NCBI RefSeq assembly: GCF_018977255.1
Contig: NW_024704771.1
Coordinates: 2,294,001 to 2,358,000 of the forward strand
DNA length: 64,000 nucleotides
Direction of reading: 5' to 3'
Source of the DNA: Callorhinchus milii
Taxonomy: Eukaryota
In this document: one piece after another, positions 6,262 through 50,280 of the stretch
Position numbering within the stretch: the first letter of the stretch is position 1
Layout: every line of letters starts with the position of its first letter
The notes under the pieces: generated by a model
Databases searched by the model: none
Told to the model about the DNA's origin: nothing
Seen by the model: the letters and a program-made list of their open reading frames with translations, nothing else
Translations under genes and position numbers: made by a program

Positions 6262-6678
6262 ATGGCCGGCAGAGAGCAGGACCAGAGCTTAGCAGAGGAT
6301 CTCACTTGCCCCGTTTGCCTTGACCTGTTCAACGATCCGGTTTCTCTGGTTTGCGGCCACTATTTCTGCCGCTCGTGTATCGCAGGCTGTTGGGAGAGGC
6401 AGGAGGCTCATTCTGCCCGGAGTGTCGTCGGGCGTGTCCGGGAAGGGAGCTGAGAGCCAGTCGACCTCTGGCTAATCTGTCCGAAAGAGCTAGAAATCTG
6501 TCTGGATCCGAAACGGGGAGAAAGGGAACATTGTTGTGGTGATCATCGGGAAGAGCTGAAGCTGTTTGGTGAAACAGATAAGAAATTGATCTGTTTGATG
6601 TGTTTCTTTTCTCCCGAGAGACAGAATCACAAATCGCACAGCGTCATGTCGGTAGACAAAGCTGCTGAGATCTACAAG
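6262..6678 (+). pseudogene. TRIM exon 1: C3HC4 RING and B-box2, frameshifted
   Basis: [26 protein letters not shown], then (frame change) [18 protein letters not shown], then (frame change) CGDHREELKLFGETDKKLICLMC..HKSH..AAEIYK. Donor aag|gtaaac. Confidence 0.9.
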
Positions 6679-7026
6679 GTAAACAAGGAACAGAGTCTAT
6701 AACTTGACTGCTGTTCTCTCTTTCTTTCACCAGCCGAGTGTCTGAAACACACTGAAGCCCATTGCTGAGCTTAAGAGAATCCTGAATATTGCCGTGTGTC
6801 CCCAGAGCGATGCACCCTGCTACAAATTCTGTAGAATATTAGGCATTAGTTGGCAAGAGCTAAGGCTTTGGTATCCCAGAGTATATGTCGAGATAGCTAC
6901 TTAAGTTTAACCAGGTAAACGGCGTCACTGGTCATTGGGAGCGCTGTCTGACAGGCTGCCCCCTGCGTGTTCTCTCTGCTCACACTGATACAGTTAGAGA
7001 TGTGTTGATTTCCATTTTGATTGCAG

Positions 7027-9227: not shown

Positions 9228-9796
9228 CTCCGGCCTCTCTGACGCTGGATCCTGACACAGCTCATCCCTGCCTCGTCCTGTCTGAGGACCTGACCGGCGT
9301 GAGAGTCGGAGATAAACCGCAGCAGCTCCCTGACTCTTCGAAGAGGTTTAGTAAATATCTCTTTGTCCTGGGATCTAAGGGCTTCACATCAGGGAGACAT
9401 TACTGGGAGGTGCAGGTGGTCAACAAGAATGTGTGGACAGTTGGAGTGGCCAGAGAGTCTATCAACAGGAAACAACGAACCACATGGTCACCAGAGGGTG
9501 GGGTCTGGGCTGTGGAGCTCGGGGGCAAGGGTTTTGAGGCTTTGGCCTCACCTCCCACCCACCTGCTTCTGACAGTGATACCTGGGAAGATTGGAGTTTA
9601 CCTGGACTATGAGGGGGGTCAGGTGTCGTTTTACAACGCTGACAACATGTCTCATCTCCACACTTTCACTAACACTTTCACTGAGAAACTTTATCCTCTG
9701 CTCAATCCTGGGTATTATATTTCAGGGAAAAATTCTGAGCCTCTGATAATCTGCCGGTCTCAGGATAAACCTGTCTCAGCCTGGCTCAGTCAGTAG
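9228..9796 (+). CDS. PRY-SPRY (B30.2) terminal exon of the TRIM gene; the frame of this exon is intact
   Basis: [62 protein letters not shown]. Polypyrimidine acceptor ctctcag at 9227. Confidence 0.9.
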
Positions 9797-13589: not shown

Positions 13590-15360
13590 AATCCGTGTAA
13601 CCCGCTGTCATTACACCCCCCCTCAAAAACCGCCCTCCATCCCTCTAATCTCTCACAAACATACCACTCCGCCCTCACCTCCGCCAAATCGTTCTTCTAC
13701 TCCAAGATAATCTTGGAAGAGAATGAAAACCCCAGGCTCCTGTTCATCAACACCAACTGGCTCCTCCACCTGCCCTCCCACACCTCGCCCATTCTCTCCT
13801 CAAGCTCTGACTGAGAAGCGATGCTGGATTTCCTCAAATCAAAAATCCAGGGATCCATTCAGCTGCCTCCACCTTCCCAACTGCCCTCCCTCCCCTTCTC
13901 CCCCACGCGCCCACACACTCTGACCCCTACCTAAAAGCTCCTTCCACATTTTGTGAACCTGTCTCCCCCGCCTCTCTCATCACCAACATATCCAGCTTGA
14001 AACACATTAACTTGACCCCCCATCCGCATACTTCTCTTTATCTTCCAGTTCCACTTCCTCGCTCCTCGACACTCCAACACCATCAATTGCTCCCTATCAT
14101 CTGGCACTGATCCCATCCTCCAAAAAACAGCTACAATCACCGCCATCCTGAACAAACCTTCCCTGGACCCATCCCTGCTTTCTAACTACCGGCCCATCTA
14201 CAACCTTCCTTTTCTTTCCAAGGTACTTGAAAGTGTTGTTGCTTCCCAGCTTCGTCCTCTCCTTGCCTACCAGTCACTTCACGACCCCCTCCAATTGGGT
14301 TTCCATGCTATTAGGAGCACAGAAACTCTTCTGGTCAAGCTGACAAACAGTATTTTGTCTGTCTGTGACCAGGGCTCCCTCTGCCTCTTCATCCTCCTTG
14401 ACTTCTCTACTGTCTTCGATACCATGAACCACTCCATCTTCCTCCACCCCCTCTCCGCTCACCTCAAAATTCAAGGTTCTCCCCTTGAATGGTTCAGTGC
14501 TTATCTCTCACATGATCTTCAATTTGTCTCCGCCAAAGGTTTCACTTCCAGCCCCCGCACAGTCTCATGCTGTGTTCCTCAGGTCCCCACCTGTTCAATT
14601 TCTATGTGCTGGCACATCATCCACATGTATGGGGTCAACTTCCACATGTATATAGATGACATCCAACTGTATCTCTCTGCCTCCACCATCGATTCCAGGA
14701 CAACTGATGTCCTGACAGATTGTCAAACATCAAGTCCTGGATGAGAGCCAGCTTTCTCCAGCTGAATGTCAGTAAGATCAAGACCCTGCTGAATGGATTG
14801 CTCCAGGACCTCCGCACCTCAGGCACTGGCAGCATCAGCATCCAAGGATGCACACTCCACCTCACCAAGTCAGTCAGGATAGCTGTGTGCCTTCTTCAAC
14901 CCTCAACAGTCTTTTGCCCCCCATATACATGCAATGATCCGCTCTGTCTTTCCCCCACCTCTGCAACATTGCTTGACTCCGCAACTACCTCAACCATCAG
15001 GCCACCAAAACCCTCATACATGCATTTGTTACCTCAAGGCTCGACTACAGAATCTTGTCACCCTCCTCCACAAGCTGCAGATCATTCAGACCTCTGTAGC
15101 TCGTGTCCTCTCCCGCGCCAGGCTCCCTGACCCCATCAACCCCACCCTTGGCCAGCTCCATTTGTTCCTCATCCCTCAGAGGATAGAATTCAAAATCCTC
15201 ATTCTCAGTTTCAAGACCCTTCACGGCCTTGGCCTGTCCTATATCTCTGACCTGTTGACTCCCAAGCTGTCTGCTCCCTCTACTGATCCAGTTGTTACCT
15301 CTCTCTCCAGCCTCACAAGCTGCTCCATGTTTAAGGTTTTCTCTGTGGAGTCTCATTGAT
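13590..15360 (+). mobile_element. Degraded L2 LINE (RT region)
   Basis: Fragments read GFHAIRSTETLLVKL..LLDFSTVFDTMNHSI..NFHMYIDDIQLYLS and [16 protein letters not shown]. Confidence 0.85.
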
Positions 15361-15402
15361 TTCCCATCTCCAACCTACCTTCTTTGCCAAAGTCCTGCAA
15401 CA

Positions 15403-19050: not shown

Positions 19051-19639
19051 TGTAGTTCGTTGTTCTTTGGTGTATCAAAGGGTTAGGGTTAGGGTATGTG
19101 TATCAGAGGGTGAGGAGTGTGTGTAGATTGTGTTTCATCATTGGACATAAAATGACACAACATGATTTGTAAATTGATCCAATATTTTGCAAGTGAAAGA
19201 CAATAGTTTGGATATTAATATTCAGTTGAACAGATACAGACGGGACCTCGGTTTAGTGAGGATTAAAGATCTCGCTTCTTGGGTGATTGTTACAGTGAAT
19301 GAGAAATGTTACAGATTATAAAAGCTGTCACTGAAAATACACGGTGTTTATACACAGTGAGACACGGCTGCTCACTGGGGAACAACATGTCACCTTGTTT
19401 ATAGATCCCAAAGTGATTTGGGAGATTTTAATGAGATGCCGTCAGAGCCTCATCGACCCCATACCACACCCCAGACCCCACTCTCTGGTGACAATGTGAC
19501 AATGGGAGATGTGAGGGTGTGTGTGAGAGGGATGTGAGAGTTTGTGTGGGGAAATGTGTGGATTGTGTGTGGGGGGATGTGAGGGTGTGTGTTGGGAGGA
19601 TACGAGTGTGTGGGTGGATGAGAGGCTCTTTCGACCACA

Positions 19640-20159
19640 TTAACCTGTCACTGGGCAGATTGTCAGAGGCTCAGAATTATACCAGGGATTGAACAGAGGA
19701 TAAAGTTTCTCAGTGAAAGTTTGTGTGAAAGTGTGGAGATGAGACATGTTGTCAACGTTATAAAATGATATCTGTCCCTCTTCATAGTCCAGATAAACTC
19801 CGACCTTCCCGAGTCTCACTGTCAGGGGCAGGCGGGTGGGAGGTGAAGACAGAGCATCATAGCTCTTGCCCCTCAGCCTCACCCCCAGACCCCACCCTCT
19901 GCTGACCAAGTGATTCGTTGATTCTTGTTGACAGACTCTGTGGCCAATCCCATAATCCACCATGACTTGTTGCCCACCTGCACCTCCCAGTAATGTTTCC
20001 CTGATGTGAAGCCCTCAGATCCCAGGACAATGGGATACAAACTAAACCTCTTCGGGGAGTCAGGGAGCGACTGCTGTTTGTCTCCGAGTCTCACACTGGT
20101 CCGGTCCTCAGACAGGATGAGCAGGGGATGGGCTGTGTCAGGATCCAGAGTGACTGTAA
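19640..20159 (-). CDS. B30.2 exon of butyrophilin-like gene 1, frameshifted at the G run 19882-19886
   Basis: [33 protein letters not shown], then (frame change) [34 protein letters not shown]. Confidence 0.9.
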
Positions 20160-23100
20160 CTGGAGGGAGAATCAGACCATTAATGTCGGACACATTTACA
20201 ATTATAAATAAGATGATCTTCAGCGTCGTCACCGGGAGAGAAGCCTTTGTGTAAAACATTGACATCTCCCGAGAACAGAATCCAGCAGAAAGGCTGACAG
20301 TCTGTGTGTGTGTGTGTGTGTGAAGGGGGATGTGAGAATGTGTGTGTGGGTGGGGATGTGGGGGTGTGTGGAGGGGTTGAGTGTGTGTGGGGGAGGGGAT
20401 GTGATGTTGTGTGGGTGATGTGAAGTTGTGTGGGTGATGTGAGGGTGTGTGTGGGGGGATGTGAGGTTTTGTTGGCAGAGATGCAAGGATGTGTGTGGGG
20501 GCATGTGATGGTGTATGTGTTGGAGGTGTTGAGGGTGTTGCGGAGGTTTGAGTGTGTGTCTGTTGGGGCGATGTGAGCTTGTGTTTGGGGCATGTGAGGG
20601 TATGTGTGATGGGGGAGGATGTGATGGTGTGTGGGAGCTTGATGGTGTTTTGGGGATTGGTGGGATGTGAGCGGGAGATGTGGGTGTGGTGAGGGTATTT
20701 GTGGGGGTGTGTATGGGTGTGTATGAAGGTGTGTGGAGTGTTTGATGTTGTATGTGTGGGGATGTGAGGTTGTGAATGGGAGGGGGGGATGTGAATGTGT
20801 GAGAGGTTGTGTTTGTGAGGGTGTGTGGGAGGATATAAGGGTGTGTGTGAGGGAACTTGGAGGTATGAGTTTGAGTGCATATGAGAGTGTGTGGGGTGTA
20901 TGTGATGTTATATGTGTGGCGGATGTGAGGCTCTGAGTGGGATTGGGGATGTGAGGATATGTCGGGGAGGTGTGAGGATGTGTGAGGTGAGGATATGAAG
21001 GTGTGTGGGGGGAATGTGAGGGTGTGAGTGAGGCGGGTGATGAGCATGTGTGTATGTGGGTGAATGTGAGCGTGTGTGAGGTTTTGTATGTGGGGTGGAT
21101 GTGAGGTTGTGTGGGTTTGCGAGGGTGTGTGTAATGGTGTGTGGGGTGGGGGGGGTTGTGATTTGAGGGAGACTGTATGGGTGGGATGTGTGTAAGTGTG
21201 ACGCGGAGTGTGAGCGTGTGAGTTTGGGGTGATATGTGGGTGGTTGAGGGTGCGCCCGGGGATGTGAGGGTGTGTGTGAGGTAAATATGAATGTATGTGT
21301 TGGGGGGGGTGTGAGTGGGGGGAATGTGTTAAGGTGTGTGTGGGGGGAATGTGGGTGTGTGTGGGGGATGTGGGTGTGTGGGGGGATATGAGTGCGTGTG
21401 GGGGTGGAAATAGGTGTGTGTTTGGGGGGGATGTGAAGTTGCGTGTGGGGCGATGTGGGGAATGTGAGGCTGTGTGTGTGGAGGTGTGAGGGTGTGTGGA
21501 TGTGACAGTGTGTGCGGGTGATGTGAGGGTATGTGGGGGGTGATGTGAGGGCGTGTGTGTGAGGCTGGACGTGAGGCGGTATGTGTGGGAGGGATGTTGA
21601 GGGTTTTATGGTGGGGTTGAGTATGGGTGGGGGAGGGGATGTGATGTGTGGGGAACGTGAGGGTGTGTGGGGGAATGTGAGGGTGTCTGGTGGCGATGTG
21701 AGGGTGTGTGTGTATCGGGCAATGTGAAGCTGTGGGTGGGGGAGATGTGAGGGTGTGTGTGAGGGTCTGTGTGTGGGGTGGATGTGAGTTTGTGTGGGTG
21801 TGTGTGAGAGTGTTTGTAATGGTGTGGGGGGGGAGGTGATTTGAGGGAGACTGTGTGGGTGGGATGTGTGTGAGTGTGAGGCGGAGTGTGAGCCCGTGTG
21901 TTTGGGGTGATGTGTGGGTGTTTGTGTGGGGGGGTGTGTTTGCTTGTGTGGGGTTTGTGTGAGGATGTGTGTGTTAGTGAGTGTGAGGGTGTATGCTGTG
22001 TATGTTCGGGGATATGAGGATGTTTGTGGGGGATGGGCTGTGATGGTGTGTGTGAGGGGATGTAAGGGTTGTGTGAGGGGATGTGAGGTTATATGCGTGT
22101 GGGGGGATGTGTGCGTGTGGGGGATTTGTGCGTGTGGGGGGATGTGTGCGTGTGGGGGTTGTGTACATGTGGGGGGATGTGTGCGTGTGGGGGGATGTGT
22201 GCGTGTGGGGGGTTGTGCATGTGGAGGTGATGTGTGCATAGAGAGGTGATGTGTGTGAGGAGGGTTGATGTGTACGAGGGGATTTGATGTGTGCGAGGGG
22301 GATTGATGCGTGTGGGGGGGTTGATGTGTACGTGGGGGGGAATGTGTGCGCCGGGGGGAATGTGTGCGCCGGGGGGAATATATGTGTGAGGGACGTGGGT
22401 ATGAAAGTCTATTTTTTTGGGGGGGGGCAGGGTGATGTGACTGTGTATGGGGTGGTGGGGAGTCAGTGTGTTGGATGTTGGTGGTTCGGTCACTCAGACT
22501 CTTACCTGCACACCTGCGAATCCTTTTCAACACTGGAACCAAGAAGAAATAAGTGATCAGATCTTTGGCAGCTCCTAACCAAGTCACACTGCCTCCCTCC
22601 CTCTCCCTCACTCTCTCTAACTCACTCCCTCCGTCTCTCACTCCCTCTCTCACTCCCTCCGTCTCTCCTTTCCTCTGTCCCTCTCTCCTTCTCGCTCCCT
22701 CCATCTCACTCCTCTCACTCCCTCTCTCTCCCCCATCATCTCTCTCTCCCTCCTTGTCTCACTCCCTCCATCCCTCCTCTTCTCACACCCTCCTCCTCTT
22801 ATTCCCTCCTGCTATCATGCCCTCCCTCTCTCACGCCCTCCCTCTCACACCCTTCCTCTCTCAAGCCCTCCCTCTTTCTCTCCCTCTTTTTCTCCCTCCC
22901 TCCCTCCCTCCCTCATTGAAGCTCACTCATTTTTTTTCCCTTTTAATGTGTGTATGTTCACAAGCCAATGTTGTCTTCGGGAAGAGAAGGGAAAGTTCAA
23001 GATGTGAAATAGACCAATGGTTGGAGTTAAACAGCCTGTAATAATTCATGGAATAGAATCATTGAAATTTACAGCCCAGAAGGAGGCCATTCACCATCGA

Positions 23101-26100
23101 GTCTATATGGGCTCTCAGATCAAAGTGTTCATACAACAGCTGCCCTGCCCTACAACTAAACCCCTTCAAGCCTCTATCCCTCATGCACGTACTTATCTAC
23201 TTCTCTGTCTACTTCCCCTCTGTTCCACCATTGGAAATCATGTATACAGCCACTTCGCCCTTAAATTCTGGAATACTGTCACTCAATCCCGTTGCCTTGT
23301 CCCCTCTCTCCCCCTTTTCAAGTCCCAACTGAAAAGCTTCCTTTTCGATCGTGTTTACAGTCACCTCCCACCCAGCCCCCCCCCCGAAAAAAAGGCTCTT
23401 TATAATACACAATATAATAATAATCCTTGCATTTGATATCTGCCACTATTAAGCACTCTGAGACGTTATCCTGAAAGCTGGGTGCTGTATAAGTGCAAGT
23501 TGTTGTCCTATAATAATAGAGTTTTCTGGAGAGTGCAGTGAGTGGGTATTTTGTTAGCAAACAAATACAACAACAACAACAAGATTCCATTTATAAAGCG
23601 CCTTTCACGTCAGGAGGACGTCCCAAGGCGCTGCACAGTTGGGTCATGACCCGAGCAGGGGGGAAATGGTCAGGGGAGGGGAGGGAGCGAGGAGGGGGGA
23701 AATGGTCAGGGTGAGGGGAGGGAAGGGAGGGAGCGAGGAGGGGGCAGAGAGTCGAGAGGGGAGCTGAAGGCTCGGTCAAAGAGAAAGGTTTTGAGACCGG
23801 CCTTGAAGGAGGAAAGGGAGGAAGCGGCGAAGGCACTGGGGGATGGAGTTCCAGAGCCTGGGGGCTGAGAGGCTGAAGGCCCGACCACCGATGGTAGGGC
23901 GGTTGGGGCGGGGACGTGGAGCAGACCGGAGCCAGAGGAACGGAGGGTACGGGCAGGTAGGTAGGGGGATAGTAGGTTGGAGAGGTAGGAGGGAGCAAGG
24001 CCGTGAATGGCCTTGTAGGTGAGGATGAGGATCTTGAATTCGATCCTCTGGGGGATGGGGAGCAGTGGAGGCGAGCGAGGGTGGGAGTGATGTGGTCGCG
24101 GTGTCTGGTGCGGGACAGTACACGAGCTGCAGAGTTCTGAATGACCTGCAGTGTGGAGGGAGGGCCGGGAAGGCCGGCGAGGAGAGAGTTCCCATAGTCC
24201 AGCCTTGAGGTGACAAAGGCGTGAACCAGGGTTTCAGCCGCGTGAGGGGTGAGGTAATGCCGTAGTCTGGCGATGTTCCGGAGGTGATGGAAGGCGGTGC
24301 CAGTTGTGGTGCGGATGTGAGGGAGAAAGGACAGCTCAGGGTCGAACAAAACGCTGAGGTTCCTGACTGGCTTTGAGATGCACTTTTACTGCACCTCAAT
24401 GTCCTTATGTCTGTTTTGTGTGAAGCATGTGAATGAAAGATATCACATTTAAAATTGTTATTTTATTTTGATAACTTACCCACTCTCTTCTCAAGATCTA
24501 GAGGATACAAAACAGAACTGTTAGAAACTGATTTCTGAATCCAGTATAGTTTAATGGTCAGTCTACATGTTTACAACATTAACAGATGTTAAAGTGCAGC
24601 TCAGCACAATTATAGGAGGTTTGAATTACAATAAAATTTACATTTACACAGCACCTTCCACAGCGGGGGACATCCCAAAGCACTGACAATGCTGGGGTCT
24701 GAGCTGCAGGTGGGAGCCGGGGTGGAGGGTCAGCAGAGGGAGATGGGAATATTAACTAAAAAAGCAGAATAAATAGGTCATGAGATGGGCCTTGAACGAG
24801 GTGAGGGAGGGGCCGAGACAGAAGGATTCTTGGATTGAGTTGCAGAGAGTGGCGGCAGAGAGGCTGAAAGCCTGAGCTGCTGATGGTGGGGAGGATCGGG
24901 TGGTGACATGAAACCGGGGTCACTGAGTGAAGGGAGAGACCAATTGTTTTATAGAACTTACACATTCATACAGTAACAGTGTTGTGATGAGAGATGTTAC
25001 TGATGGGAACGTACCTTTGATCTCTCGATGCTGTTTTACACTGTAGCCGACCAGAACACTCAGCATCATTATGGCAAGTCCTAAGAGCAGTGAGGAAACC
25101 ACCAAACCCACTGGCACTTTGGGAAAGAACTCGTCTGTCAAGAAATGTAAATAGACATTTAAGTATATATTATGATGTCAAAACAATAAATATCTTTATT
25201 TACCCTCAAGTGACTGTATTACACACAATAGCTCAGTAGCTGTCACGGGCTTCACTCAAAGTGAAGTCCTGGTAGTGTATTGGATAAAACGCTCGCCTCG
25301 CATGTGAGAAGACACGGGTTAGATTCCCAGGCAGAGAGAAACATTAGACAAGTTTCCTTACTCCACATGCCTCTGTTTACTTAGCAGTTAAGTAGGAACC
25401 CGCTTGTTCATTGTTTGGAAGATCGCTTTCCAGGGCTAATAATCCCATCAAAAAATACAATATAATAATTGGGTCACTCATCCGTGACTGTTTGTGGGAC
25501 ACTGCTGTGTGCAATTGGCTGCCGTGTATCACCCACAAAATATACAGTCAATTCACTTAGAGTATAGTCTGTGAAGCTCTTTATGATGTTTCATTCAAAC
25601 ACGTGATAATGCACTGTATCAAATCCTACAATTATTATTATGTACTTTTCCTGGGCAGAGAATTGGGGTCTTGGAGCTGAAGTGGCACTAAAGGGATGTG
25701 GTTGTTAAGGGAATGTCAGAATAAAATCCATTCTTTGTGGCCGTCCCGTTAGTCCAGTCCCTGAGAGCCAGACTCCAAGGGTGAATGTATGGATAAGGAA
25801 AAGAAAAGGAACAAAGATGGAGCTTTGAGGAACCCCCTCTGTGAATATACTGGGCAGATGTGAAGCCATTGGTAAGATAAAGTGGAGATGCTGGGAGAGA
25901 CAGGCATGAAACCAGCAAAGTACAGAGGATGTGAGGTGAATCAGGGAGGAGAAGTGGACAAGTGTGAAAGGTGATAGAGCGATAGAGAAGGACAAAGAGA
26001 CACAGGGAGCCCTAGTCATCAACAGAGAGAACATCTGGTGTGACTTTGTCCAGGGCTCTCTTGGTGCTGTGGGCAGGGAGGAAGCCAGTTTGGAGAGAAT

Positions 26101-29100
26101 TTTACAGGAAATGATGGGAAAGGAAGGAATGAATCTTCAAGGCTACAACTCATCCCAGCACCTTGGAGAGGAAGGGCAGGTTGGAAATGGGGCAACGGCT
26201 AGAGAGACTGTAAGGAATTCAGTGAAAGTTTAAGTTGAAGAGCGTAAATGGCAGCATTTGTGAAAGAGAATTGCCATGCCAGAGGAAAGGAAACCATTCC
26301 TAATATCTATTTTATTTTAGTTTTCAAATGTGATTTCTGGAGGAACTTCTAACCTTCAATGTCAAGTAAATAGAAATTGGAGACCCCAAAGAGAACATTG
26401 GAACAAATGTAAAACAGAATCCCAACACATTCTTCCATAAAAATAGCAAATAGAGGGTAATCGGGAACAAGATAAATCCATAGGGATACAAAGTGAATTG
26501 AAGAGAAGGCTGAACAGGAGATAGTGATGTATTAAATGACCACATTTGTTGGTAATCAAACAGACAGTCACTAACAATGTGCTGTCCAATATAACAGTGA
26601 TGACAGAGCAATACCTGGCAACTCATGAACCCGAGTGAATGGAAAATTCATGTAAACCATAAATAGAAGCAAATAATTGGAAGATGACCTCAATGTATAT
26701 GTCTGCCTTAAACCTGACCTTCAGAATGCTGAACCTGTGTCCTCTTGTCCTGCTGCCTCCATGTGGATGTCCTATAATTATGTCCTATTCCCCAGCTCAG
26801 GTCCATTTCCCTGACAGCCCAGCACCTTCGCACATCCTCCCAATTTGAAAGATGTTTTACAAATGTCTTTTGTTGTTGTCCTGTAGCTTCTCAGCTCTTA
26901 ACCTGTAGTCTTCCCTTCACTGTGAGGTGGATCAGGCAACTTTTGCCTCTTCTGAAGCAATGGTGGCTGTGAGTTACGAAGTGTTGATTAATTCACAAGA
27001 TAATCAGCAGTTTGAATAGGTTAGCAGGAAGGATGGGTGAGCTGGAGTACTGAAATCAGAATTGATTTCAGTTTGTAATGAGAATATTCATTGGCTTCAA
27101 AACCCTCCATGGCCCTGCTTCTCCTGATCTTTGTGATAAGCTAACTCTGTTTCTGCCCCAGTTCTGTAGAATTCCATCCACAGACCCTCCATTCGCTCAG
27201 TCACTTGTCTCCTTCAAGATCCACCTCTTTCACCGAGCTTTCATTCATTCATTCCTACTGCCACCTACCCTGCCCTCCATCCCTCCTGACCCCAAACTTC
27301 AGATAGGGTCCAACATGGGGTGGACCTTTGTATAGTGTGTCTCACACTGGGACATCCTCCTGGCATGAAAGGCACTTTACAAATGTAATTTGTTGTTCTC
27401 AAACCACATGCTGAGTTTGGTATTTTGAAAGGATGAACTCAAGTGGACCGTATCATCCAGACTGATCGAGTTTTCACTTCATGTGCTATACAAATCTGCA
27501 TCATATTTAACAAACAATCATTAATATTTCCTTCTTGTTCATTTACTGACCTGAGATTTGGAGTTTTGCTTCTTGTTCATTTTCTGAATTGTGAATCAGA
27601 CACCTGATCTTGTTGGTTGAATAGATTATTTCTATTTGGCTTTTAACACTGTAGAGACCTTTAGAATCCTCTCTGACAGTCCAATTACTGAGTGTTGTTA
27701 AGTTGTTTCCCTGATCATCAAACCATAGAACCTCTGGTGCTGGGAACCATCCACTGGATTCACACCGCAGCCTCACACCATCACTGTGCTCATCAACGTG
27801 AATCCAAAGCTGACTGCCAAGCCCTGGAAGAGACAGGAGACGTGAATCAGACAATATTTATACCCGGGACATTAAAGACCAGTAACTTTACTGAAAACAC
27901 GTTTACAACATTCTGAATAAATTGACACTAATGAATTGTTCTTGTCAATATAAATTATTGCTTTTGGACATAACATAAACAAATAATGAAAATTTGTATA
28001 CAGAGATTACATTAAATAAAATGAATTGTAAATGTTACTGACCTATAACATTCAACTTTATCAATACATCTTGATATGATCCGGCGTACTCAACAAAGCA
28101 TGTGTACTCTCCGTTATCTGACACCCGCACATCTCCCAGTCTGAGAGACACGTTGCCATTGATAAACTCCTTTACAAACAGTTGTGTTCTATGTCTGTAG
28201 GCTTCATCCTGTTTCCTCAGTTGATGTCGTCTCTCCTTGTATAAGTGCACAGGGGAATCGTAACTTGTCCTGAACCATCTCACCTCCACACCCTCTCGTG
28301 GCAGGTCTGTGGAACACTTACAGTCCAGGACAACATCTGAACCAGCAATGGCTGGGACAGGGAGGGCCGGGCCACTGACTGTGAATCTCTCTGTTCAATA
28401 ACAAACAATGGATAGTTAGGATTTTCAGTCACACTGACTCGGACAAACTCTGCCAATAGACAGTCACTGTCCTTGCAATAATCCTTGCACTTGATATATC
28501 TTATAGATAATTATTTGGGGAGGACAAGTTTTCTCAGCTATGGGGAGAACGTGGGAGTGGGATTGATTTGGATAGCTGCTTTGAAAAGTGGGCAGGAACA
28601 CAATGGGTCAAAGGTCCTCCTGTGTTGTATAATTCTATGATTCTCTGAGGATTTTTTTCAATTTCAATGGATAGAGTTAGGATTTTCAGTCCCACTGGCT
28701 CAGACAAACTTGTCAACAGACGTCACTTAGATATCAATTTGTTTCTGATATAAAGTAGAAGTCACACTTTTACAGCTGCAATAGAACTGACATTGGCAGT
28801 AAATTCATCTGGATCTTATAAATAATAATAATAATCCTTGCATTTGATATAGTACCTTATCATGTCTTCTCAAAAGCGCTTCGCAGAATATATTGTAGAG
28901 GGAATTAACTATATTTCATGGGTAAAAAGTGGTTGCCAATTGCACAGAGTGGTATCCCACAAGCAATCGTGGATTGAGTGACCAATTTATTATTTATGTT
29001 ATTTTAAGGAATTATTACCCCGGAAACCCGATCCATCAATTGACTAACAACCAGGTTCCTACTTAGGGGAGCACAGCTTTGCCTGGTTCCAATCCTACTT

Positions 29101-31423
29101 TTCCCACCGTTTGCACTTCATTTTCATCAACAGCTTCACCTCTAGTCCCCGCGCTGTCATGTGTGGCATCACTCACAGCCCTGTCCTTGGTCCCCTCCTC
29201 TTCAATCTATACATACTCCCTCTCGGTGATGTCATCCTCAGGCAAAGGATCAATTTTCACGTGTATGTGGATGAAATCCAACTCTATCTCACCACCTCCA
29301 CCATTGACTTACAGGACCGTTGATGTCCTGGCTAATGATCTGTCTGACATCAAGTCCTGGACAAGAGCCAATTTCCTCCAGCTCAATGGAAGACAGAGGC
29401 TCTCTTGCTTGGCTCCTGCAGCAGTTCCTCACTTCATCTAATAATAATAAATAATCCTTGCATTTGATATAGCGCTTTTCACGTCGGGAGGACGTCCCAA
29501 AGCGCTTCACAGAATAGACTGTAAAGTGAATTGACTGTATATTTGTGGGCGAACGCGGCAGCCAATTGCGCACAGCAATGTCCCACAAACAGTCGTAGAT
29601 TGAAAATGACCAATTTATTATTGCTTTGTTTTGGAGGGATTATTATTAGGTGTGTGGAGTAAGGAAACTTGCCCAAGGTTTCGCCCTCTGCCTGGAATTG
29701 AACTCAGGTCTCTCACTTGCAAAGCGAGTGCTCTAACCACTGAGCTACAGGACTCCACATCTGTTGAACATTATCACTATTCATGGCTGATTCACATCTC
29801 GGCTTGACTATGCCAACTGCCTGCTCACCGGACTTCCCAGCTCTTCCCTCCACAAGCTACAGATTATTCAGAACTCTGCAGCTTGTGTCCTCTCCCACAC
29901 CAGCCTCTGGGAATTTATCATCCCAGTTCTTGCCCAGCTTCACTGGCACCCCATCCCTCAGAGAATCAAGTACAAAATCCTCGTTCTCATCTTTAAGTCC
30001 TTCCAGAGTCTTGCTCCCCCCTACCTTTCTGACCACCAAATCCTATATCAGCCTGTCGGCTCCCTCCGCTCAGTGAACACTGGCCTGCTTCAGGTCGCCC
30101 GCACTTCCAGCACCACCATTGCCAATCAGGCATTCAGCATCTCTGCCCCCACACTCTGGAATTTTGTCCAACAATCCCTCCACCTCATACCCTCTCTTGC
30201 CTCCTTCAAGTGTCCCTTCTAAAGATCTTGCTCCTCAATTGTATCTTTGGGCACCTTCCCACCCACATCCCCTGCCGTCCACCTCTCCTGACCCGACTCC
30301 CAGCTCGGGTCTAAAAACCCCTGACTGCCTAGCGCTCTGGGACATTTTTCCGATGTGAGGGGCACTGTACAAGTGTAATTTGTTTTTGTTATTGTTGTTG
30401 CATTGTCAGAAGTGCTGTCCTTCTGATGAGCCATTAATTTGAGGTCCTGTCTGCCTGTTTATGTGTCAGTAAACATCCAGTGGCTCTACTCGAAAAGAGA
30501 AGGGAGTTTGCTACGTTCACCTGCACTTCACAGTGAGAAATGCTTTGAAATGTTTTGATTCTATATTCTCACAAGACTCTGTGAAGAAATGTTTGCTGAT
30601 CTCACTTATAACCAGGTTAGCTACAATTTCAGATTTTATGTTCCTTTGTTTTCCAAGAAGGAAGTGTTGTCCACTATTTAGCTTGACAATTCACTTCACT
30701 ATTTAAGCATCTCAATCAGATTCCCCTTCAACCTAATCAGCTCTGAGGAATATAACCGATGTCTAACCAGCCTCTCAACACAGTTAAAACATTTCATCCC
30801 AGGTATTAATCTCATGAATCATTTTAAGATTAGTGGAACTCCCTTCTCACAGAATCATACAATAACACAGCACAGAAGGACATTCGGCCCAGCGAGTCCA
30901 TGCCGGCTCTTTGAAAGAGCTAATGTCTTAAAATCTCAGAGCTTTTAAAAAAAGCAATTTGGTCACTCAATCCAAAACTGTTTATGGGGCACTACTGTGC
31001 AAAATTGGCTGCCACAAATCTGCCCACAAAATTTTCCACAATTCTGTGAAATGCTTTGAGACGTCTCAGCAATGAGATGAGGCACTATATCAAATGCAAA
31101 TATGATTGTTATATAAATTCCTCACTTTTATATTCCTCTTTATAAAGACCATCATTAGTTTCACTAATTACTTTATCAACCCAAAAACAAGATTTCAGTG
31201 ATTTATGTATTTGGAACCTAAATGCCTTTGCTCATCTCCTGGAACATTAGCAGCTCTCAGTGTGTGAATCACACTCACTCCCAACCGCCGCCTTCAGCAG
31301 CTCTCCCTTTACCTTCAGCAATTTAACACCAACAGAAATCAAACAGATTCAATGTGTTTCCTTACCAGTCAGTGAGAGGGGAAGCACAAGCCATAGGACC
31401 TGAATACCGTGTTTCCAGCTCAT
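19640..31423 (-). CDS. Butyrophilin-like gene 1 (leader, IgV, IgC, TM, B30.2); 1-nt frameshift in B30.2
   Basis: Phase-1 exons with GT-AG boundaries: 31366-31423 (leader [19 protein letters not shown]), 28043-28390, 27551-27823, 25015-25134, 24480-24497 (18 nt), 22506-22532 (27 nt), 19640-20159. The total of 1364 nt is one base short of an open 454-aa frame. Confidence 0.88.
20280..22480 (+). repeat. About 2.2 kb GT/G-rich low-complexity intronic repeat, followed by a CT-rich tract (22590-22930)
   Basis: gatgtgagggtgtgtgtgggggg-type units, with an internal duplication of about 110 bp (21130-21235 vs 21810-21915). Confidence 0.95.
22506..22532 (-). CDS. 27-nt exon of butyrophilin-like gene 1
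   Basis: ttccag|TGTTGAAAAGGATTCGCAGGTGTGCAG|gtaaga, reading VLKRIRRCA. Confidence 0.8.
23568..24375 (-). mobile_element. Young L2 LINE 3' end
   Basis: Closely similar to 15403-16150. ORF reads [24 protein letters not shown]. Confidence 0.92.
24480..24497 (-). CDS. 18-nt micro-exon of butyrophilin-like gene 1
   Basis: cctctag|ATCTTGAGAAGAGAGTGG|gtaagt, reading DLEKRV. Homologous to 44531-44548. Confidence 0.75.
25015..25134 (-). CDS. Transmembrane exon of butyrophilin-like gene 1
   Basis: [40 protein letters not shown], 120 bp, AG/GT boundaries. Confidence 0.88.
25261..25640 (+). mobile_element. tRNA-headed SINE, older long subfamily
   Basis: gtgaagtcctggtag..ggttagattcccaggcag head and caagtttccttactccac core. 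Confidence 0.75.
25680..26290 (-). mobile_element. Degraded L2 fragment
   Basis: GVPQSSIF-like RT remnant in the - frames. Confidence 0.6.
27551..27823 (-). CDS. IgC exon of butyrophilin-like gene 1
   Basis: [50 protein letters not shown], the typical BTN IgC motif C.S.GWFP.PEV.W. Confidence 0.92.
28043..28390 (-). CDS. IgV exon of butyrophilin-like gene 1 (348 bp)
   Basis: [64 protein letters not shown], a BTN/MOG-type V-set domain. Confidence 0.93.
29050..30400 (+). mobile_element. Degraded L2 interrupted by a SINE
   Basis: [24 protein letters not shown], with a tail at about 30340-30390. Confidence 0.75.
29439..29758 (-). mobile_element. Full-length young tRNA-Ala-like SINE with an L2-type tail and (ATT)n
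   Basis: Head GTGGAGTCCTGTAGCTCAGTGGTTAGAGCACTCGCTTTGCAAG..GAGTTCAATTCC. Near-identical to 48392-48713 and 52748-53071. Confidence 0.92.
31366..31423 (-). CDS. Leader (signal peptide) exon of butyrophilin-like gene 1
   Basis: ATG at 31423, 58 nt, donor ctg|gtaagg. Identical to 50223-50280. Confidence 0.85.
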
Positions 31424-38354: not shown

Positions 38355-38905
38355 TTATCTTTCCAATCGATGTGTAAAGGAACTAATTGTCAATGGTTCA
38401 GAGTTTTTTCCATCCAGATTAAACCAGGGACTGAAGAAAGGATAAAGTTTCTCAGTGGAAGTGTGGGTGAAAGTGTGGAGATGAGACATGTTATCAGCGT
38501 TGTAAAATGTCACCTGTCCCCCCTCATAGTCCAGGAAAACTCCGATCTTCCTGACTTTCACTTTTAGAGGCAGGCGGGTCCAAGGTGAGGTACCAGCCCA
38601 GTATTCATTTCCATTTCTCAATATCACAGTCCAGTATCCAGTCTGTGGTGTGGCTGTGATGTCTCCTTTCCTGTTGACAGACTCTCTGGCCACTCCAACA
38701 TTCCACGCAGTCTTGTTGCCCACCTGCACTTCCCAGTAATGTCTCCCTGATGTTAATCCCTCAGATCCCAGGACACAGACCCAGCGATCAAACCTCTCTG
38801 GAGTGTCTGGGAGTGGCTGCATTTGGCCTCCAAGTCTCACACTGGTCAGGTCCTCAGACAGGATGAGATTAGGATGGGCTGTGTCAGGATCCAGAGTGAC
38901 TCGAA
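38355..38905 (-). CDS. B30.2 exon of butyrophilin-like gene 2
   Basis: [68 protein letters not shown]. Confidence 0.93.
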
Positions 38906-47900: not shown

Positions 47901-50280
47901 TCATTACTCAACACTCTTTGCTGAGATCTTGTAAGTTACAGAAATCTGTATCATATTTATCAGACTATCATTAGTAATTCAGTGTAAATACTGACCTGAT
48001 ATATGCAGTTTCCCTTCTTGTTCATTTTCTTCATTGTGAATTAGACACCTGATCTTGTTCGTTGAATGGATTATTTCTATTTGGCTTTTAACACTGTAGA
48101 GACCTTTAGAATCCTCTCTGACCGTCCAGTTACTGAACGTTGTTAAGTTGTTTCCCTGATCATCCAACCATAGAACCTCTGGTGCTGGGAACCATCCACT
48201 GGATTCACACAGCAGCCTCACACCATCACTGTGCTGCCCATCAACGTGAATCCAAGGCTGACTGCCAAGGCCTGGAAGAGACAGGAGTCGTGAATCAGAC
48301 AATATTTATCCCCAGGATATTACAGTGCAGTAACTTTAATGAAAACACATTGACAACATTCTGAATAGATGATATTAAATTACATTCATTTATAATAATA
48401 ATAAACCTTGCATTTCATATAGCGCTTTTCACGTCGGGAGGACGTCCCAAAGCGCTTCACAGAACACACTGTAAAGTGCATTGACTGTATATTTGTGGGC
48501 GAACGCGGCAGCCAATTGCACACAGCAATGTCCCACAAACAGTCATAGATTGAAAATGACCAATTTATTATTGCTTTTGGTTTTGGAGGGATTATTATTA
48601 GGCTCTGTGTGGAGTAAGGAAACTTGCCCAAGGTTTCGCCCTCTGCCTGGAATTGAACTCAGGTCTCTCACTTGCAAAACGAGTGCTCTAACCACTGAGC
48701 TACAGGACTCCACGGCACTTTATGTTATTAAAACACATGTAGTTTCACCCACAAAATACACAGACAACTACACAGTGAATTCACTTCACAGTACATTCTG
48801 TGAAGCACTTTAAGATGTCTCAAAGATGCGATAAGGCGTCATATCAATTGGAAAGATTATTATCATTATCATTACTTTGGAATGTAATTATCATTAAAGT
48901 GGAGTCCTGTAGCTCAGTGGTTAGAGCACTCGCCTTGGAAGCGAGACACCTGGGTTCAATTCCAGGCAGAGGGCGAAACCTTGGGCAAGTTTCCTTACTC
49001 CACACAGAGCCTAATAATAATCCCTAAAACAAAACAATAATAAATTGATAATTTTCATTCAATGACAGTTTGTGGGACACTGCAATGCTCAATTGACTGC
49101 CGCGTTTCGTCCACAAATATACGGTCAATTCACTTTACATCATGTTCTGTGAAGCGCTTTGAGCTGTCGAGAAGACATGAAAAGCACTATATTAAATGCA
49201 AGATTGTTTACAGACTTTTCTTTGTTTATAATGTATTTCAAACACAGAATAACATAACGATTGTATTTACACACCATTACCCCCCAAAAAAATGAGTTGT
49301 AAACATTTCAAACCTATAACTTTCAACTCCATCACTGCCTCTTCATACCATCCAGCGTAGTCAATGAAACATCTGTAGGTGCCATTATCTGAGCCCCATA
49401 CATCTTTGAGTTTGAGAGATACATTGCCATGAATGAATTCCTTTTTAAAAAGTTCTGTTCTGTGTTTGTAGGCTTCTTCCTGCTCGCCTGTCTGATCGCG
49501 CCCCTCACTGTATAAGTGCACAAGGGAGTCAAATCTTGTCCTGAACCATCTCACCTCCACACCCTCCAGGGGAAGGTCTGTGGAACACTTACAGTCCAGC
49601 ACAACATCCGAACCAGCAATGGCTGGGACTGGGAGGGCCGGGCCACTGACTGTGAATCTCTCTGTTTAATTACAAAAGAAAGGGGAAAAAAGTTAGGATT
49701 TGCAGAATGGCACTGGTACAACTTCCTGTAACTCAGTGGTTAGAGCGCTCGCCTCGCAAGAGAGAGGACCTGGGTTTGATTCCCATGCAGAGCGGTATGT
49801 TCGGCAAGTTTCCTTACTCGACACGCCTCTGGTTACCTTGCAGTGAATAGGAACTTGGTTGTTAGTCAATTGGCTGACCGCATTTCCGAGGGTAATAATC
49901 CCTCCAATAAATAAATAAATGAAATTGTAATAATTTAATCACTCACACCATGACTGTTTTGGGAATTGGCTGCCTCATTCCAACCACAAAATATACAGTC
50001 AACTTACTTTGTAGTATATTCTGTGAAATGCTTTGAGACATCTTAAAGATGTTATAAGGCGTTATATCAAATGCAGGATTTATTATAAATATTAAGGTAG
50101 AACATCAGCAGCTGTCAGTGCGTGAATTTCGCTCACTCCCAGCCACGGTCTTCAGCAGCTCCCCCTTTACCTTCAGCAATTTAACACCAACAGAAATCAA
50201 AGACATAAATGTGTTTCCTTACCAGTCAGTGAGAGGGGAAGCACAAGCCATAGGACCTGAATACCGTGTTTCCAGCTCAT
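38355..50280 (-). CDS. Butyrophilin-like gene 2, intact, 465 aa (leader, IgV, IgC, TM, B30.2)
   Basis: Phase-1 exons 50223-50280, 49314-49661 (348), 47996-48271 (276), 47372-47491 (120), 44531-44548 (18), 40608-40634 (27), 38355-38905 (551). The total of 1398 nt is open to the stop codon, and all introns are GT-AG. Confidence 0.92.
40608..40634 (-). CDS. 27-nt exon of butyrophilin-like gene 2
   Basis: cttttcag|AGATGAAAAGGCTTTCCCGTTGTGCAG|gtaatt, reading EMKRLSRCA. Confidence 0.8.
40705..41170 (+). mobile_element. Old SINE (DeuSINE/SacSINE-like)
   Basis: tggctcagt head, gggtgttaaagatcctttggcactatttgaa core, and L2-like tail. Confidence 0.65.
41825..44385 (-). mobile_element. CR1 LINE, 5'-truncated (part of endonuclease plus RT), degraded
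   Basis: [38 protein letters not shown] and VYRPPNS motifs. Tail aggagtaggccattcagccc with (cataa)n. Confidence 0.9.
44531..44548 (-). CDS. 18-nt micro-exon of butyrophilin-like gene 2
   Basis: ccaatag|ATCTCCAGAAAAGACTGG|gtaagt, reading DLQKRL. Confidence 0.78.
44675..47010 (-). mobile_element. CR1 LINE, 5'-truncated and internally deleted
   Basis: [31 protein letters not shown], with a tail at 44675-44720. Confidence 0.88.
47372..47491 (-). CDS. Transmembrane exon of butyrophilin-like gene 2
   Basis: [40 protein letters not shown]. Confidence 0.88.
47530..47860 (-). mobile_element. tRNA-headed SINE, older long subfamily
   Basis: gtggagtaaggaaacttgcc core and reverse head. Confidence 0.7.
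47996..48271 (-). CDS. IgC exon of butyrophilin-like gene 2
   Basis: [42 protein letters not shown]. Confidence 0.92.
48392..48713 (-). mobile_element. Full-length young tRNA-Ala-like SINE
   Basis: Near-identical to 29439-29758. Confidence 0.92.
48899..49205 (+). mobile_element. Full-length tRNA-Ala-like SINE, head-to-head with the previous copy
   Basis: gtggagtcctgtagctcagtggttagagcactcgcc... Confidence 0.88.
49314..49661 (-). CDS. IgV exon of butyrophilin-like gene 2 (348 bp)
   Basis: [58 protein letters not shown]. Confidence 0.93.
49721..50090 (+). mobile_element. tRNA-headed SINE, older long subfamily
   Basis: cctgtaactcagtggttagagcgctcgcc head with the long core. Confidence 0.75.
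50223..50280 (-). CDS. Leader exon of butyrophilin-like gene 2
   Basis: [22 protein letters not shown] at 50280, donor gtaagg. Confidence 0.85.

What the first reader, a model, noticed from the sequence alone, without database searches (positions are those of the whole stretch)
19640..20159. Gene 1 carries a TRIM-type B30.2 on a gene-2-like ectodomain (apparent domain swap)
Seen: gene 1 IgC is about 90% identical to gene 2, but its B30.2 differs from gene 2 at about 55 of roughly 158 aligned residues and from the TRIM B30.2 (9228-9796) at about 43. It shares TRIM-specific motifs: GDK, LPDS.KRFS.Y, QR.TWS.EGGVW, GK..-AL.SPPT (with the same 1-aa gap), GK.GVYLDY, SFYN, LYPL.NP. Genes 2 and 3 instead share [31 protein letters not shown] and FSPWFN.DG. 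Inference: a B30.2 exon was exchanged between cytosolic TRIM sensors and membrane BTN receptors, so intracellular ligand-sensing modules may be shuffled between the two families.
Basis: partly seen in the sequence, partly recalled or inferred. Interest (0 to 1): 0.82.

Follow-up and report, generated by a model that had tools for sequence, protein, structure and literature searches.

The report
Shark butyrophilin shares TRIM sensor domain
In this elephant-shark immune gene cluster, the intracellular B30.2 sensor domain of a membrane butyrophilin gene is more closely related to those of cytosolic TRIM genes than to its butyrophilin neighbours, because the body of that exon is repeatedly copied between the two gene families; the gene flagged is an ordinary member of this system, not a one-off chimera.

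Summary
The window is Callorhinchus milii DNA.

- The exon has a 1-nt frameshift.
- The 'gene-2-like ectodomain' applies only to IgC. G1-G2 dS is 0.17 for IgC, against 0.54 for IgV and 0.40 for B30.2.
- The 'TRIM-type' motifs occur in at least 9 C. milii butyrophilins, so G1 has its subfamily's usual domain.
- The neighbouring TRIM is not the donor.

What holds up: B30.2 does move between the families.
- One clade for all C. milii BTN B30.2 is rejected for proteins (AU p 6e-5) and for DNA of 8 inspected loci (p 0.0015).
- G1's exon body is as close to TRIM P0242 (89.4%) as to its BTN sibling P0125. It shares 9 derived bases with that TRIM, against 1 with the sibling.
- Every TRIM-BTN match begins 8-14 nt inside the exon. 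The exon ends and introns follow the host gene.

Best explanation: recurrent gene conversion limited to the exon body. This is a new variant of known B30.2 shuffling (finTRIM-NLR). Interest is moderate.

The parts
19640..20159 (-). G1 exon 7: the B30.2 (PRY+SPRY) exon, which is the finding itself. It follows a phase-1 acceptor and ends in a TAA stop at 19640-19642.
   Evidence: ORFs and translation; splice context; Pfam PRY 2e-25 and SPRY 3e-12; 98-100% identical to residues 282-455 of P0121.
19879..19886 (-). Frameshift site: a run of five G (19882-19886) followed by an in-frame TGA (19879-19881). As assembled, the SPRY half is cut off.
   Evidence: The exon is 520 nt, which after the 2 nt that complete the split codon is not a multiple of 3. 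The database proteins P0121 and P0211 read across this point.
19754..19783 (-). Short tract encoding [12 protein letters not shown]. It carries six derived bases shared only by G1 and TRIM P0242, and it lies inside a stretch of about 100 nt (about 19690-19791) with a single G1-P0242 difference.
   Evidence: The signature occurs in 3 of 289 proteins: P0121 and P0211 (both G1 lineage) and TRIM P0242.
20140..20200 (-). BTN-type 5' junction of the B30.2 exon: intron ...TGATTCTCCCTCCAG, then TTACAGTCACT ('VTVT'). Similarity to TRIM exons begins only at 20151.
22506..22532 (-). G1 exon 6: 27-nt juxtamembrane mini-exon (V)LKRIRRCA, with AG/GT sites, phase 1-1.
   Evidence: identical to the linker of P0121.
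24480..24497 (-). G1 exon 5: 18-nt mini-exon (D)LEKRV, with AG/GT sites, phase 1-1.
25015..25134 (-). G1 exon 4: transmembrane exon ([40 protein letters not shown]).
   Evidence: dS vs G2 is 0.37.
27551..27823 (-). G1 exon 3: IgC (BTN C2-set_3). Its homology with G2 extends into both intron flanks (27492-27922).
   Evidence: dS vs G2 is 0.17.
28043..28390 (-). G1 exon 2: IgV.
   Evidence: dS vs G2 is 0.54.
31366..31423 (-). G1 exon 1: ATG and signal peptide ([19 protein letters not shown]).
   Evidence: 100% identical to P0128.
9228..9796 (+). B30.2 exon of the window's TRIM-like gene, with the TRIM-type start CTCCGGCCTCTCTGACG ('APASLT').
   Evidence: 97% identical to P0257.
6262..6699 (+). 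TRIM exon 1: a RING lacking its last Cys pair, then an in-frame stop, then the B-box. The annotated homologue P0257 skips the RING.
38355..38905 (-). G2 B30.2 exon (G2/G3 type).
55681..56219 (-). G3 B30.2 exon (G2/G3 type). The upstream exons of G3 lie beyond the window.
   Evidence: P0027.
47942..48370 (-). G2 IgC exon with flanks, 88.9% identical to G1's. This is the homogenised piece.
20299..22400 (.). G/T-rich minisatellite (unit about GGGGATGTGAGGGTGTGTGTG on the + strand) filling the intron upstream of the B30.2 exon. The same repeat resumes downstream at 19504-19617.
   Evidence: also flanks the B30.2 exon of paralogue P0125 in L003.

Best explanation
G1 is a normal seven-exon butyrophilin of the main C. 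milii BTN subfamily: signal peptide, IgV, IgC, TM, two juxtamembrane mini-exons and B30.2. All its introns are phase 1. Its B30.2 exon belongs to a pool of B30.2 sequences ('type A') that BTN and TRIM genes of the same cluster share.

The pool is kept mixed by non-allelic gene conversion. The tracts lie inside the exon body, from about codon 5 (LDPD...) to just before the stop. The first 11-17 nt, the 3' end and the introns stay specific to the host gene.

The G1 lineage itself shows one such exchange with the lineage of TRIM P0242. The direction is unknown.

G2 and G3 carry a different, older B30.2 type. Separately, the IgC exon has been homogenised between G2 and the G1 family.

Shown here:
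- the gene model;
- the discordant trees;
- the synonymous-site distances;
- the fixed boundaries of TRIM-BTN homology;
- the derived bases shared by G1 and P0242.

Inferred:
- gene conversion, rather than repeated whole-exon shuffling, as the mechanism;
- the functional consequence, namely that the membrane BTN would sense in the cytosol the same class of ligand as the related TRIMs;
- whether the frameshift is real (pseudogene or null allele) or a homopolymer error of the assembly.
For: Gene model.
- Canonical AG/GT sites and phase-1 introns throughout; the linker is identical to the intact 455-aa model P0121.
- No RING, B-box or coiled-coil remnants between 20160 and 27500, tested with 78 TRIM queries and by tblastx.

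Subfamily.
- At least 9 BTN models carry the same B30.2 type together with G1-like Ig domains.

Trees.
- A 100/99 clade of 16 TRIM, 9 BTN, G1 and the window's TRIM. G2+G3 fall outside it. A second mixed clade has 97/81 support, and the elasmobranch TRIM/BTN clade is also mixed (100/99).
- AU tests: all C. milii BTN B30.2 as one clade, p 6.5e-5. The four BTN exons with inspected DNA as one clade, p 0.0015. G1 as sister of its sibling P0125, p 0.02.

DNA.
- Exon-body identity is 89.4% for G1-P0242 (TRIM), 89.4% for G1-P0125 (BTN) and 89.5% for P0125-P0242.
- Shared derived bases: 9 (G1+P0242) against 1 and 3. Six of the nine lie within 27 nt. Longest-run p is 0.017.

Boundaries.
- All TRIM x BTN matches start at the same base, 8 nt into the BTN exon and 14 nt into the TRIM exon, and end before the stop.
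- BTN x BTN matches include the BTN exon start and, for G1-P0125, about 320 nt of intron.
- TRIM x TRIM matches include TRIM intron and 3' flank.

Per-exon divergence.
- dS by exon and Ig trees.

Precedents.
- B30.2 exchange between finTRIM and NLR genes (PMC2657112).
- Partial-gene conversion in NLR-B30.2 genes (10.1101/022061).
- Hybrid BG genes in chicken (PMC4046983).
- Ig homogenisation in BTN3 (PMC6790196).
Against: - No transcript evidence was available, so the exon 6 to exon 7 splice of G1 rests on the near-identical model P0121 and on sequence signals.
- Two older annotations split the locus: P0128 (Ig+TM only) and P0211 (B30.2 only).
- The AU test for 'G1-type + G2 + G3 form one clade' is only borderline (p 0.046) and the group was named after the tree was seen.
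- Support inside the type-A clade is modest (80-94), so the number and direction of transfers are uncertain.
- The excess-run statistic for the G1-P0242 tract was not significant (p 0.18). Only the longest-run version was (p 0.017).
- Several BTN models used in the protein tree (P0132, P0134, P0136, P0140) were not checked at the DNA level and could be mis-joined predictions.
- Only 8 exons were compared as DNA.
Confidence: 0.7

Rival explanations
1. One reading: one recent swap of the whole exon. A BTN gene with a gene-2-like ectodomain received the complete B30.2 exon of a TRIM gene such as its neighbour at 9228-9796.
For: G1 is closer to the window's TRIM than to G2 or G3 at amino-acid, nucleotide and synonymous levels. 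Both exons follow phase-1 introns, so an exon swap would keep the reading frame.
Against: - The neighbouring TRIM is only 84.6% identical. TRIM P0242 and BTN P0125 are both 89.4%.
- The G1 type is shared by at least 9 BTN paralogues, so any founding event predates G1.
- The exon start, 3' end and introns are BTN-type, and about 320 nt of upstream intron is shared with BTN P0125.
- The ectodomain is G2-like only in IgC.
Confidence: 0.06
2. The exon is not part of G1. It is a stranded B30.2 exon, either a relic of a TRIM gene or a separate B30.2-only gene, as the split annotations P0128 and P0211 imply. The frameshift would then mark it as dead.
For: - P0128 ends after the first mini-exon with no B30.2, and P0211 is a B30.2-only model.
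- There is a frameshift with an immediate stop.
- A 2.3-kb minisatellite separates exon 6 from the B30.2 exon.
- A small B30.2 fragment lies just downstream.
Against: - It is on the same strand and in the right order, with a phase-1 acceptor matching the phase-1 donor of exon 6.
- The exon start and 3' end are BTN-specific and shared with G3 and P0125.
- There are no RBCC exons upstream.
- P0121-P0126 are full-length models with the same linker and exon order.
- P0211's N-terminus is an intron read-through.
Confidence: 0.1
3. No exchange took place. BTN B30.2 domains have a single origin, and the pattern comes from faster evolution of G2/G3, or from convergent selection on the ligand-binding loops of G1-type BTNs and TRIMs.
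For: - With four sequences, the unrooted grouping (TRIM,G1|G2,G3) fits a monophyletic BTN group.
- The differences between the types are concentrated in variable-loop regions.
- The AU test for G1-type + G2 + G3 is borderline.
Against: - Synonymous distances show the same ranking.
- A single BTN clade is rejected for proteins (p 6.5e-5) and for DNA (p 0.0015).
- TRIM P0242 nests among G1-type BTNs and shares 9 derived bases with G1, several of them synonymous.
- TRIM and BTN B30.2 domains cluster by lineage (holocephalan vs elasmobranch), not by architecture.
Confidence: 0.05

Closest known systems
B30.2 exon shuffling between finTRIM (group A) and NLR genes in zebrafish (van der Aa et al. 2009, PMC2657112)
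   Same: A single-exon B30.2 ligand-binding module is shared between two otherwise unrelated innate-immune architectures. It was detected because B30.2 domains cluster across architectures in trees.
   Different: The partners here are TRIM and membrane butyrophilins in a chimaera. Only the exon body is shared, while the exon ends and introns stay host-specific. The exchange is recurrent and possibly runs in both directions.
Partial-gene conversion in the zebrafish NLR-B30.2 family (10.1101/022061)
   Same: Different domains of one gene family have different histories. B30.2 is homogenised across subfamilies while other domains are not, and this was inferred from synonymous divergence.
   Different: There the conversion is among genes of one architecture. 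Here it crosses between two architectures that share no other homologous exon.
Origin of butyrophilins by joining B7-like Ig exons to a B30.2 exon. The Ig-SPRY pair is listed among gnathostome domain-shuffling products (PMC11788884). The classical proposal by Henry, Vernet and Pontarotti is cited from my own knowledge.
   Same: The same two building blocks and the same phase-1 intron logic.
   Different: That was a single ancient founding event. Here the exchange continued after the holocephalan-elasmobranch split and within the C. milii cluster.
Hybrid genes in the chicken BG cluster (PMC4046983) and concerted evolution of the primate BTN3 Ig domain (PMC6790196, citing Afrache 2017)
   Same: Exon-by-exon mosaic histories occur within a BTN-like tandem cluster. 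Homogenisation of one Ig exon among paralogues matches the G1-family/G2 IgC result.
   Different: Those cases involve only BTN-family members and have no TRIM partner.

Membership tests
Butyrophilin (BTN/BTNL: IgV-IgC-TM-B30.2 type I membrane protein), for G1 | N-terminal signal peptide and IgV domain | tested here: met
   ATG at 31423 with a hydrophobic leader. Pfam V-set 2e-11. 100% identical to P0128.
Butyrophilin, for G1 | Membrane-proximal BTN-type IgC domain | tested here: met
   Pfam C2-set_3 ('Butyrophilin subfamily 3 member A2-like, Ig-C') 1.5e-20.
Butyrophilin, for G1 | Single transmembrane segment followed by short juxtamembrane exons | tested here: met
   Hydrophobic stretch [23 protein letters not shown] in exon 4, followed by mini-exons of 18 and 27 nt, all phase 1. 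No TM predictor was run.
Butyrophilin, for G1 | Intact C-terminal cytoplasmic B30.2 (PRY+SPRY) on the same transcript | tested here: inconclusive
   PRY and SPRY are present, and the splice signals and phase fit. However, a 1-nt frameshift truncates SPRY as assembled, and no transcript data were available. The intact near-identical model P0121 exists.
Class IV TRIM (RING-B-box-coiled coil-B30.2), as host of the 19640-20159 exon | RING, B-box and coiled-coil exons upstream on the same strand | tested here: not met
   No hits between 20160 and 27500 from 78 TRIM proteins that do find the window's own TRIM exons at 6262-6699 and 7415-7711. The tblastx search was also negative.
Class IV TRIM, as host of the exon | TRIM-type exon start (pyrimidine tract, then CTCCGGCC.CTCTGAC, 'APA[AS]LT') and TRIM-type 3' end | tested here: not met
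   G1 has the BTN start TTACAGTCACT and the BTN 3' end.
Inter-family B30.2 exchange (the finTRIM-NLR kind) | B30.2 domains cluster across architectures with support, and monophyly by architecture is rejected | tested here: met
Inter-family B30.2 exchange | Similarity holds at synonymous sites and is confined to the B30.2 exon | tested here: met
   dS values. Homology boundaries and absence of flank homology.
Inter-family B30.2 exchange | Formal recombination or gene-conversion fragments (GENECONV, RDP) on a full exon set | not tested
   Those programs and the full genome were not available. Only a run test on one trio was done (p 0.017).

The most novel reading that the evidence does not exclude
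In cartilaginous fishes, linked TRIM and butyrophilin genes draw on one common, continually exchanged pool of B30.2 ligand-binding modules. Gene conversion is limited to the exon body and may run in both directions. A cell-surface BTN and a cytosolic TRIM E3 ligase would then recognise the same intracellular ligand. This would give paired 'degrade it' and 'report it to lymphocytes' arms, an ancestral form of the inside-out sensing known from BTN3A1.
Probability: 0.3. Interest if true: 0.7.

Novelty: new variant of a known kind. Interest (0 to 1): 0.5.

Why it matters
B30.2 is the part of TRIM proteins that recognises viral and cellular targets. It is also the part of BTN3A1 that senses phosphoantigen inside the cell.

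If TRIM and BTN genes in an early-branching jawed vertebrate keep swapping the body of this exon, recognition specificities evolved in one family become available to the other at once. The families' separate phylogenies would then be misleading for this domain.

There are two practical consequences:
- Orthology calls and 'TRIM-like' or 'BTN-like' names based on B30.2 alone are unreliable in these genomes. P0211, for example, is named TRIM39-like although it is the last exon of a butyrophilin.
- The result offers a testable pair for shared ligand binding: G1/P0121 and TRIM P0242.

For the scan itself, the flagged gene is ordinary for its subfamily. The interesting object is the cluster-wide process.

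Tried and rejected
- **Mosaic from the four window sequences.** The apparent BTN-like first 85 nt of G1 turned out to be mostly private changes of the window's divergent TRIM ([14 protein letters not shown]). Only the first 11 nt and the 3' end are truly architecture-specific.
- **Four-taxon site counts.** They are uninformative about a swap because the unrooted tree fits both hypotheses.
- **Flank homology by Smith-Waterman.** None was found between any TRIM and BTN pair. The TRIM-G1 z of 4.4 is due to CA/GT-rich simple repeats in both introns.
- **Looking up P0121's locus.** It is not on record, because P0121 is isoform X2.
- **L001.** This locus, fetched through P0257, matches window 1-11810 and then diverges. 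It therefore could not show whether the frameshift exists in the other assembly.
- **Excess-run statistic for the G1-P0242 tract.** Not significant (p 0.18).
- **Not run.** Structure prediction, fold search and the 50%-identity representative search would not discriminate among sequences that are 65-90% identical.
- **A technical trick.** Two of the three homology searches used composite queries of window exons so that the length filter would admit full-length proteins. The first attempt failed on a region-bounds error.

Full report
**What is at the coordinates**

The window is vertebrate DNA with a single N. Database matches identify it as Callorhinchus milii, the elephant shark.

It contains four B30.2 exons:
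- a TRIM-like gene on the + strand (RING/B-box exon 6262-6699, coiled-coil exon from 7415, B30.2 exon 9228-9796);
- three butyrophilin genes on the - strand: G1 (19640-20159), G2 (38355-38905) and G3 (55681-56219).

The finding's interval is exactly G1's last exon.

I rebuilt G1 from the sequence:

| Exon | Coordinates (- strand) |
|---|---|
| Signal peptide | 31423-31366 |
| IgV | 28390-28043 |
| IgC | 27823-27551 |
| Transmembrane | 25134-25015 |
| Mini-exon | 24497-24480 |
| Mini-exon | 22532-22506 |
| B30.2 | 20159-19640 |

Every junction is AG/GT and every intron is phase 1. Pfam confirms V-set, BTN-type C2-set_3, PRY and SPRY.

**Check of the observation**

- IgC of G1 vs G2: 88.9% nt and about 90% aa.
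- B30.2: G1 differs from G2 at 57 of 170 aligned residues, and from the window's TRIM at 46 of 170.
- All listed motifs and the shared one-residue gap are present.
- The ranking also holds at synonymous sites: dS is 0.27 for G1-TRIM, 0.40 for G1-G2 and 0.43 for G1-G3. Convergence at the protein level therefore does not explain it.

Three things were missed.
1. The exon is out of frame. A run of five G (19882-19886) leads into TGA, and the last 80 residues are read in another frame. Intact, 98-100% identical database versions exist (P0121; P0211 also reads across). I cannot tell a true null allele from a homopolymer error.
2. G1 lacks five codons near the C-terminus.
3. G1 and G2 are only 73% identical in IgV.

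**The G1-G2 contrast is mostly an IgC effect**

By exon, G1-G2 synonymous divergence is 0.54 (IgV), 0.17 (IgC), 0.37 (TM) and 0.40 (B30.2). The outlier is the similarity of IgC, whose homology also runs into both intron flanks. The divergence of B30.2 is not the outlier.

In the IgC tree G2 nests inside the G1 family. G3, whose B30.2 is sister to G2's, has an IgC of a different, old type that groups with P0155 and shark BTNs across a 100/100 split. Exons in this cluster therefore have separate histories. Part of what looked like a B30.2 swap in G1 is homogenisation of IgC between G2 and the G1 family. Hominoid BTN3 genes show a similar homogenisation of an Ig exon, there the IgV domain (PMC6790196).

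**G1's B30.2 is its subfamily's normal type**

A search with G1's exons returned a family of C. milii butyrophilins (P0121-P0126, P0129-P0131, P0135, P0138, P0148). Their Ig domains are 80-94% identical to G1's, and their B30.2 domains carry the same 'TRIM-type' motifs, joined through the same DLEKRV / xLKRIRxCA linker.

Conversely, the 'BTN-type' motifs of G2 and G3 occur in TRIMs P0031, P0035, P0041 and P0079, and in a Heptranchias TRIM, P0029. Neither motif set is specific to one architecture.

No RING, B-box or coiled-coil remnant lies between the B30.2 exon and G1's TM exon. The exon is therefore not a stranded TRIM exon, although two older annotations split the locus (P0128 without B30.2; P0211 with B30.2 only).

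**B30.2 nevertheless crosses between the families**

In a careful ML tree of 86 B30.2 domains:
- G1 and the window's TRIM fall in a 100/99 clade of 16 TRIM, 9 BTN and 2 B30.2-only proteins from C. milii.
- G2+G3 lie outside that clade.
- A second clade (97/81) mixes 19 TRIMs with BTNs P0136 and P0140.
- An elasmobranch clade (100/99) again mixes TRIMs and BTNs of the same species groups.
- Bony-vertebrate BTNs and an 'old' shark BTN clade sit outside all of these (99/96).

AU tests give the following.

| Hypothesis held together | Delta lnL | p-AU |
|---|---|---|
| All C. milii BTN B30.2 as one clade (group defined a priori) | 161 | 6.5e-5 |
| G1-type + G2 + G3 as one clade (post hoc) | 61 | 0.046 |

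The second result is only borderline.

**DNA evidence from inspected loci**

I fetched reference-assembly loci for TRIM P0257 (L001, which also holds a second TRIM), TRIM P0242 (L002) and BTN P0125 (L003). All come from scaffold MU249860.1.

Exon-body identities:

| Pair | Identity |
|---|---|
| G1 vs P0125 (BTN) | 89.4% |
| G1 vs P0242 (TRIM) | 89.4% |
| P0125 vs P0242 | 89.5% |
| G1 vs window TRIM | 84.6% |
| G1 vs G2 / G3 | 76-77% |

The DNA tree gives (G1,P0242) 77/79, joined by P0125 at 96/92. Holding the four BTN exons as one clade is rejected (p 0.0015). Holding G1 with its sibling P0125 is also rejected (p 0.02).

G1 and TRIM P0242 share nine derived bases, against one for G1+P0125 and three for P0125+P0242. 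Six of the nine lie within about 19754-19783 and encode [12 protein letters not shown]. That signature occurs only in the G1 lineage and in P0242 among 289 proteins. The longest-run p is 0.017. A looser excess-run statistic gave p 0.18.

**Where homology starts and stops**

In every TRIM x BTN comparison the match begins at the same base, 8 nt into the BTN exon and 14 nt into the TRIM exon. It ends shortly before the stop.

- BTN exons share their own start (TTACAGTCACT, 'VTVT') and their own 3' end. G1 and P0125 also share about 320 nt of upstream intron.
- TRIM exons share a pyrimidine tract, the start CTCCGGCC.CTCTGAC ('APA[AS]LT') and a 3' flank.
- There is no TRIM-BTN flank homology.

A body that ignores architecture, with ends that obey it, points to gene conversion inside the exon rather than transfer of a whole exon with intron pieces. 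Some other BTNs (P0134, P0140 and the shark P0098 group) do have TRIM-like exon starts at the protein level, so whole-exon events may also occur. Those models were not checked as DNA.

**Mechanism and function**

The most likely process is non-allelic gene conversion among interspersed TRIM and BTN genes of one cluster. L001 shows a BTN, a TRIM and a second TRIM within 24 kb.

The direction is unresolved:
- G1-type BTNs nest among TRIMs, which suggests TRIM to BTN.
- TRIMs P0242 and P0253 nest among G1-type BTNs, which suggests BTN to TRIM.

Functionally, G1-type BTNs would present on a membrane receptor the same cytosolic recognition module as related TRIMs. This is inference from what B30.2 does in TRIMs and in BTN3A1. 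As assembled, G1 itself would make a protein truncated within SPRY.

**Comparison with what is known**

- B30.2 exon shuffling between finTRIMs and NLRs is established (PMC2657112).
- Partial-gene conversion that homogenises B30.2 is established for zebrafish NLRs (10.1101/022061).
- The Ig-SPRY combination of butyrophilins is itself listed as a gnathostome domain-shuffling product (PMC11788884).
- Hybrid genes are known in the chicken BG cluster (PMC4046983).
- A recent phylogenomic survey of butyrophilins that includes C. milii does not mention TRIM at all (PMC12841164).
- My literature searches found no description of continuing TRIM-BTN exchange.

I therefore rate this as a new variant of a known kind.

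**Verdict**

Modules are shuffled between the families, but G1 is not a fresh chimera, the neighbouring TRIM is not the donor, and the exchange involves the exon body only.
- Interest is moderate (0.5).

Noticed in passing
window 19879-19886 (- strand): One-base frameshift in a run of five G inside G1's B30.2 exon, followed at once by TGA. Intact near-identical proteins exist (P0121), so this is either a null allele or pseudogene, or a homopolymer error of the assembly.
   Followed up: partly
window 6262-6699 (+ strand): The window's TRIM gene has a decayed RING: the last Cys pair is replaced and an in-frame stop lies between the RING and the B-box. The reference model P0257 starts in an upstream ORF (5890-6024) and skips the RING. 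It may be a RING-less TRIM or a pseudogene.
   Followed up: partly
window 19504-19617 and 20299-22400: The same G/T-rich minisatellite of about 21-23 nt (GGGGATGTGAGGGTGTGTGTG) flanks G1's B30.2 exon on both sides and fills most of the last intron. The paralogue P0125 (L003) has it on both sides too. It could be recombinogenic; this was not tested.
   Followed up: partly
window about 19437-19499 (- strand): A fragment of about 60 nt resembling the middle of a B30.2 exon (the ...EGGVWGV... region) lies about 140 nt downstream of G1's stop. It may be a relic of a partial duplication or of an aborted conversion.
   Followed up: no
window 46462-46665 (- strand): The UniProt/Ensembl model of G2 (P0012) uses an 'exon' lying inside a LINE-like ORF region (46593-46901) in place of the real TM exon at 47364-47528. 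This looks like an annotation artefact.
   Followed up: partly
window 55681-64000; protein P0027: G3's B30.2 is sister to G2's, but its IgC (known only from P0027, because the exons lie beyond the window) is 43-45% identical to G1/G2 and groups with P0155-type and shark BTN IgC. This is another exon-level mosaic.
   Followed up: partly
window 11810 onward vs L001 17309 onward: The reference scaffold MU249860.1 matches window 1-11810 at 95-99% and then carries a different TRIM gene (421 aa) where the window has LINE-rich DNA followed by G1. This is either structural variation between assemblies or a recent segmental duplicate.
   Followed up: partly
protein P0228 (not in the window): A 307-aa C. 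milii protein carries a G1-type B30.2 with the BTN-type 'VTVT' start behind a TM-like segment and a coiled-coil-like region, with no Ig domains. This may be a third architecture using the same module, or a partial model.
   Followed up: no
L002 7309-7485 (- strand): A partial B30.2 fragment (the last 59 residues or so, 73% identity to a type-A consensus) lies upstream of TRIM P0242.
   Followed up: no
window 14282-17339, 23565-24400, 42183-46901, 56371-61096: Several LINE/reverse-transcriptase-like ORF clusters and SINE-like repeats occupy the intergenic and intronic space of the cluster, including G1's intron between the mini-exons.
   Followed up: no
window 22592-22914: A C/T-rich (CCTC)n-like low-complexity array lies directly upstream (in gene orientation) of G1's 27-nt mini-exon.
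   Followed up: no
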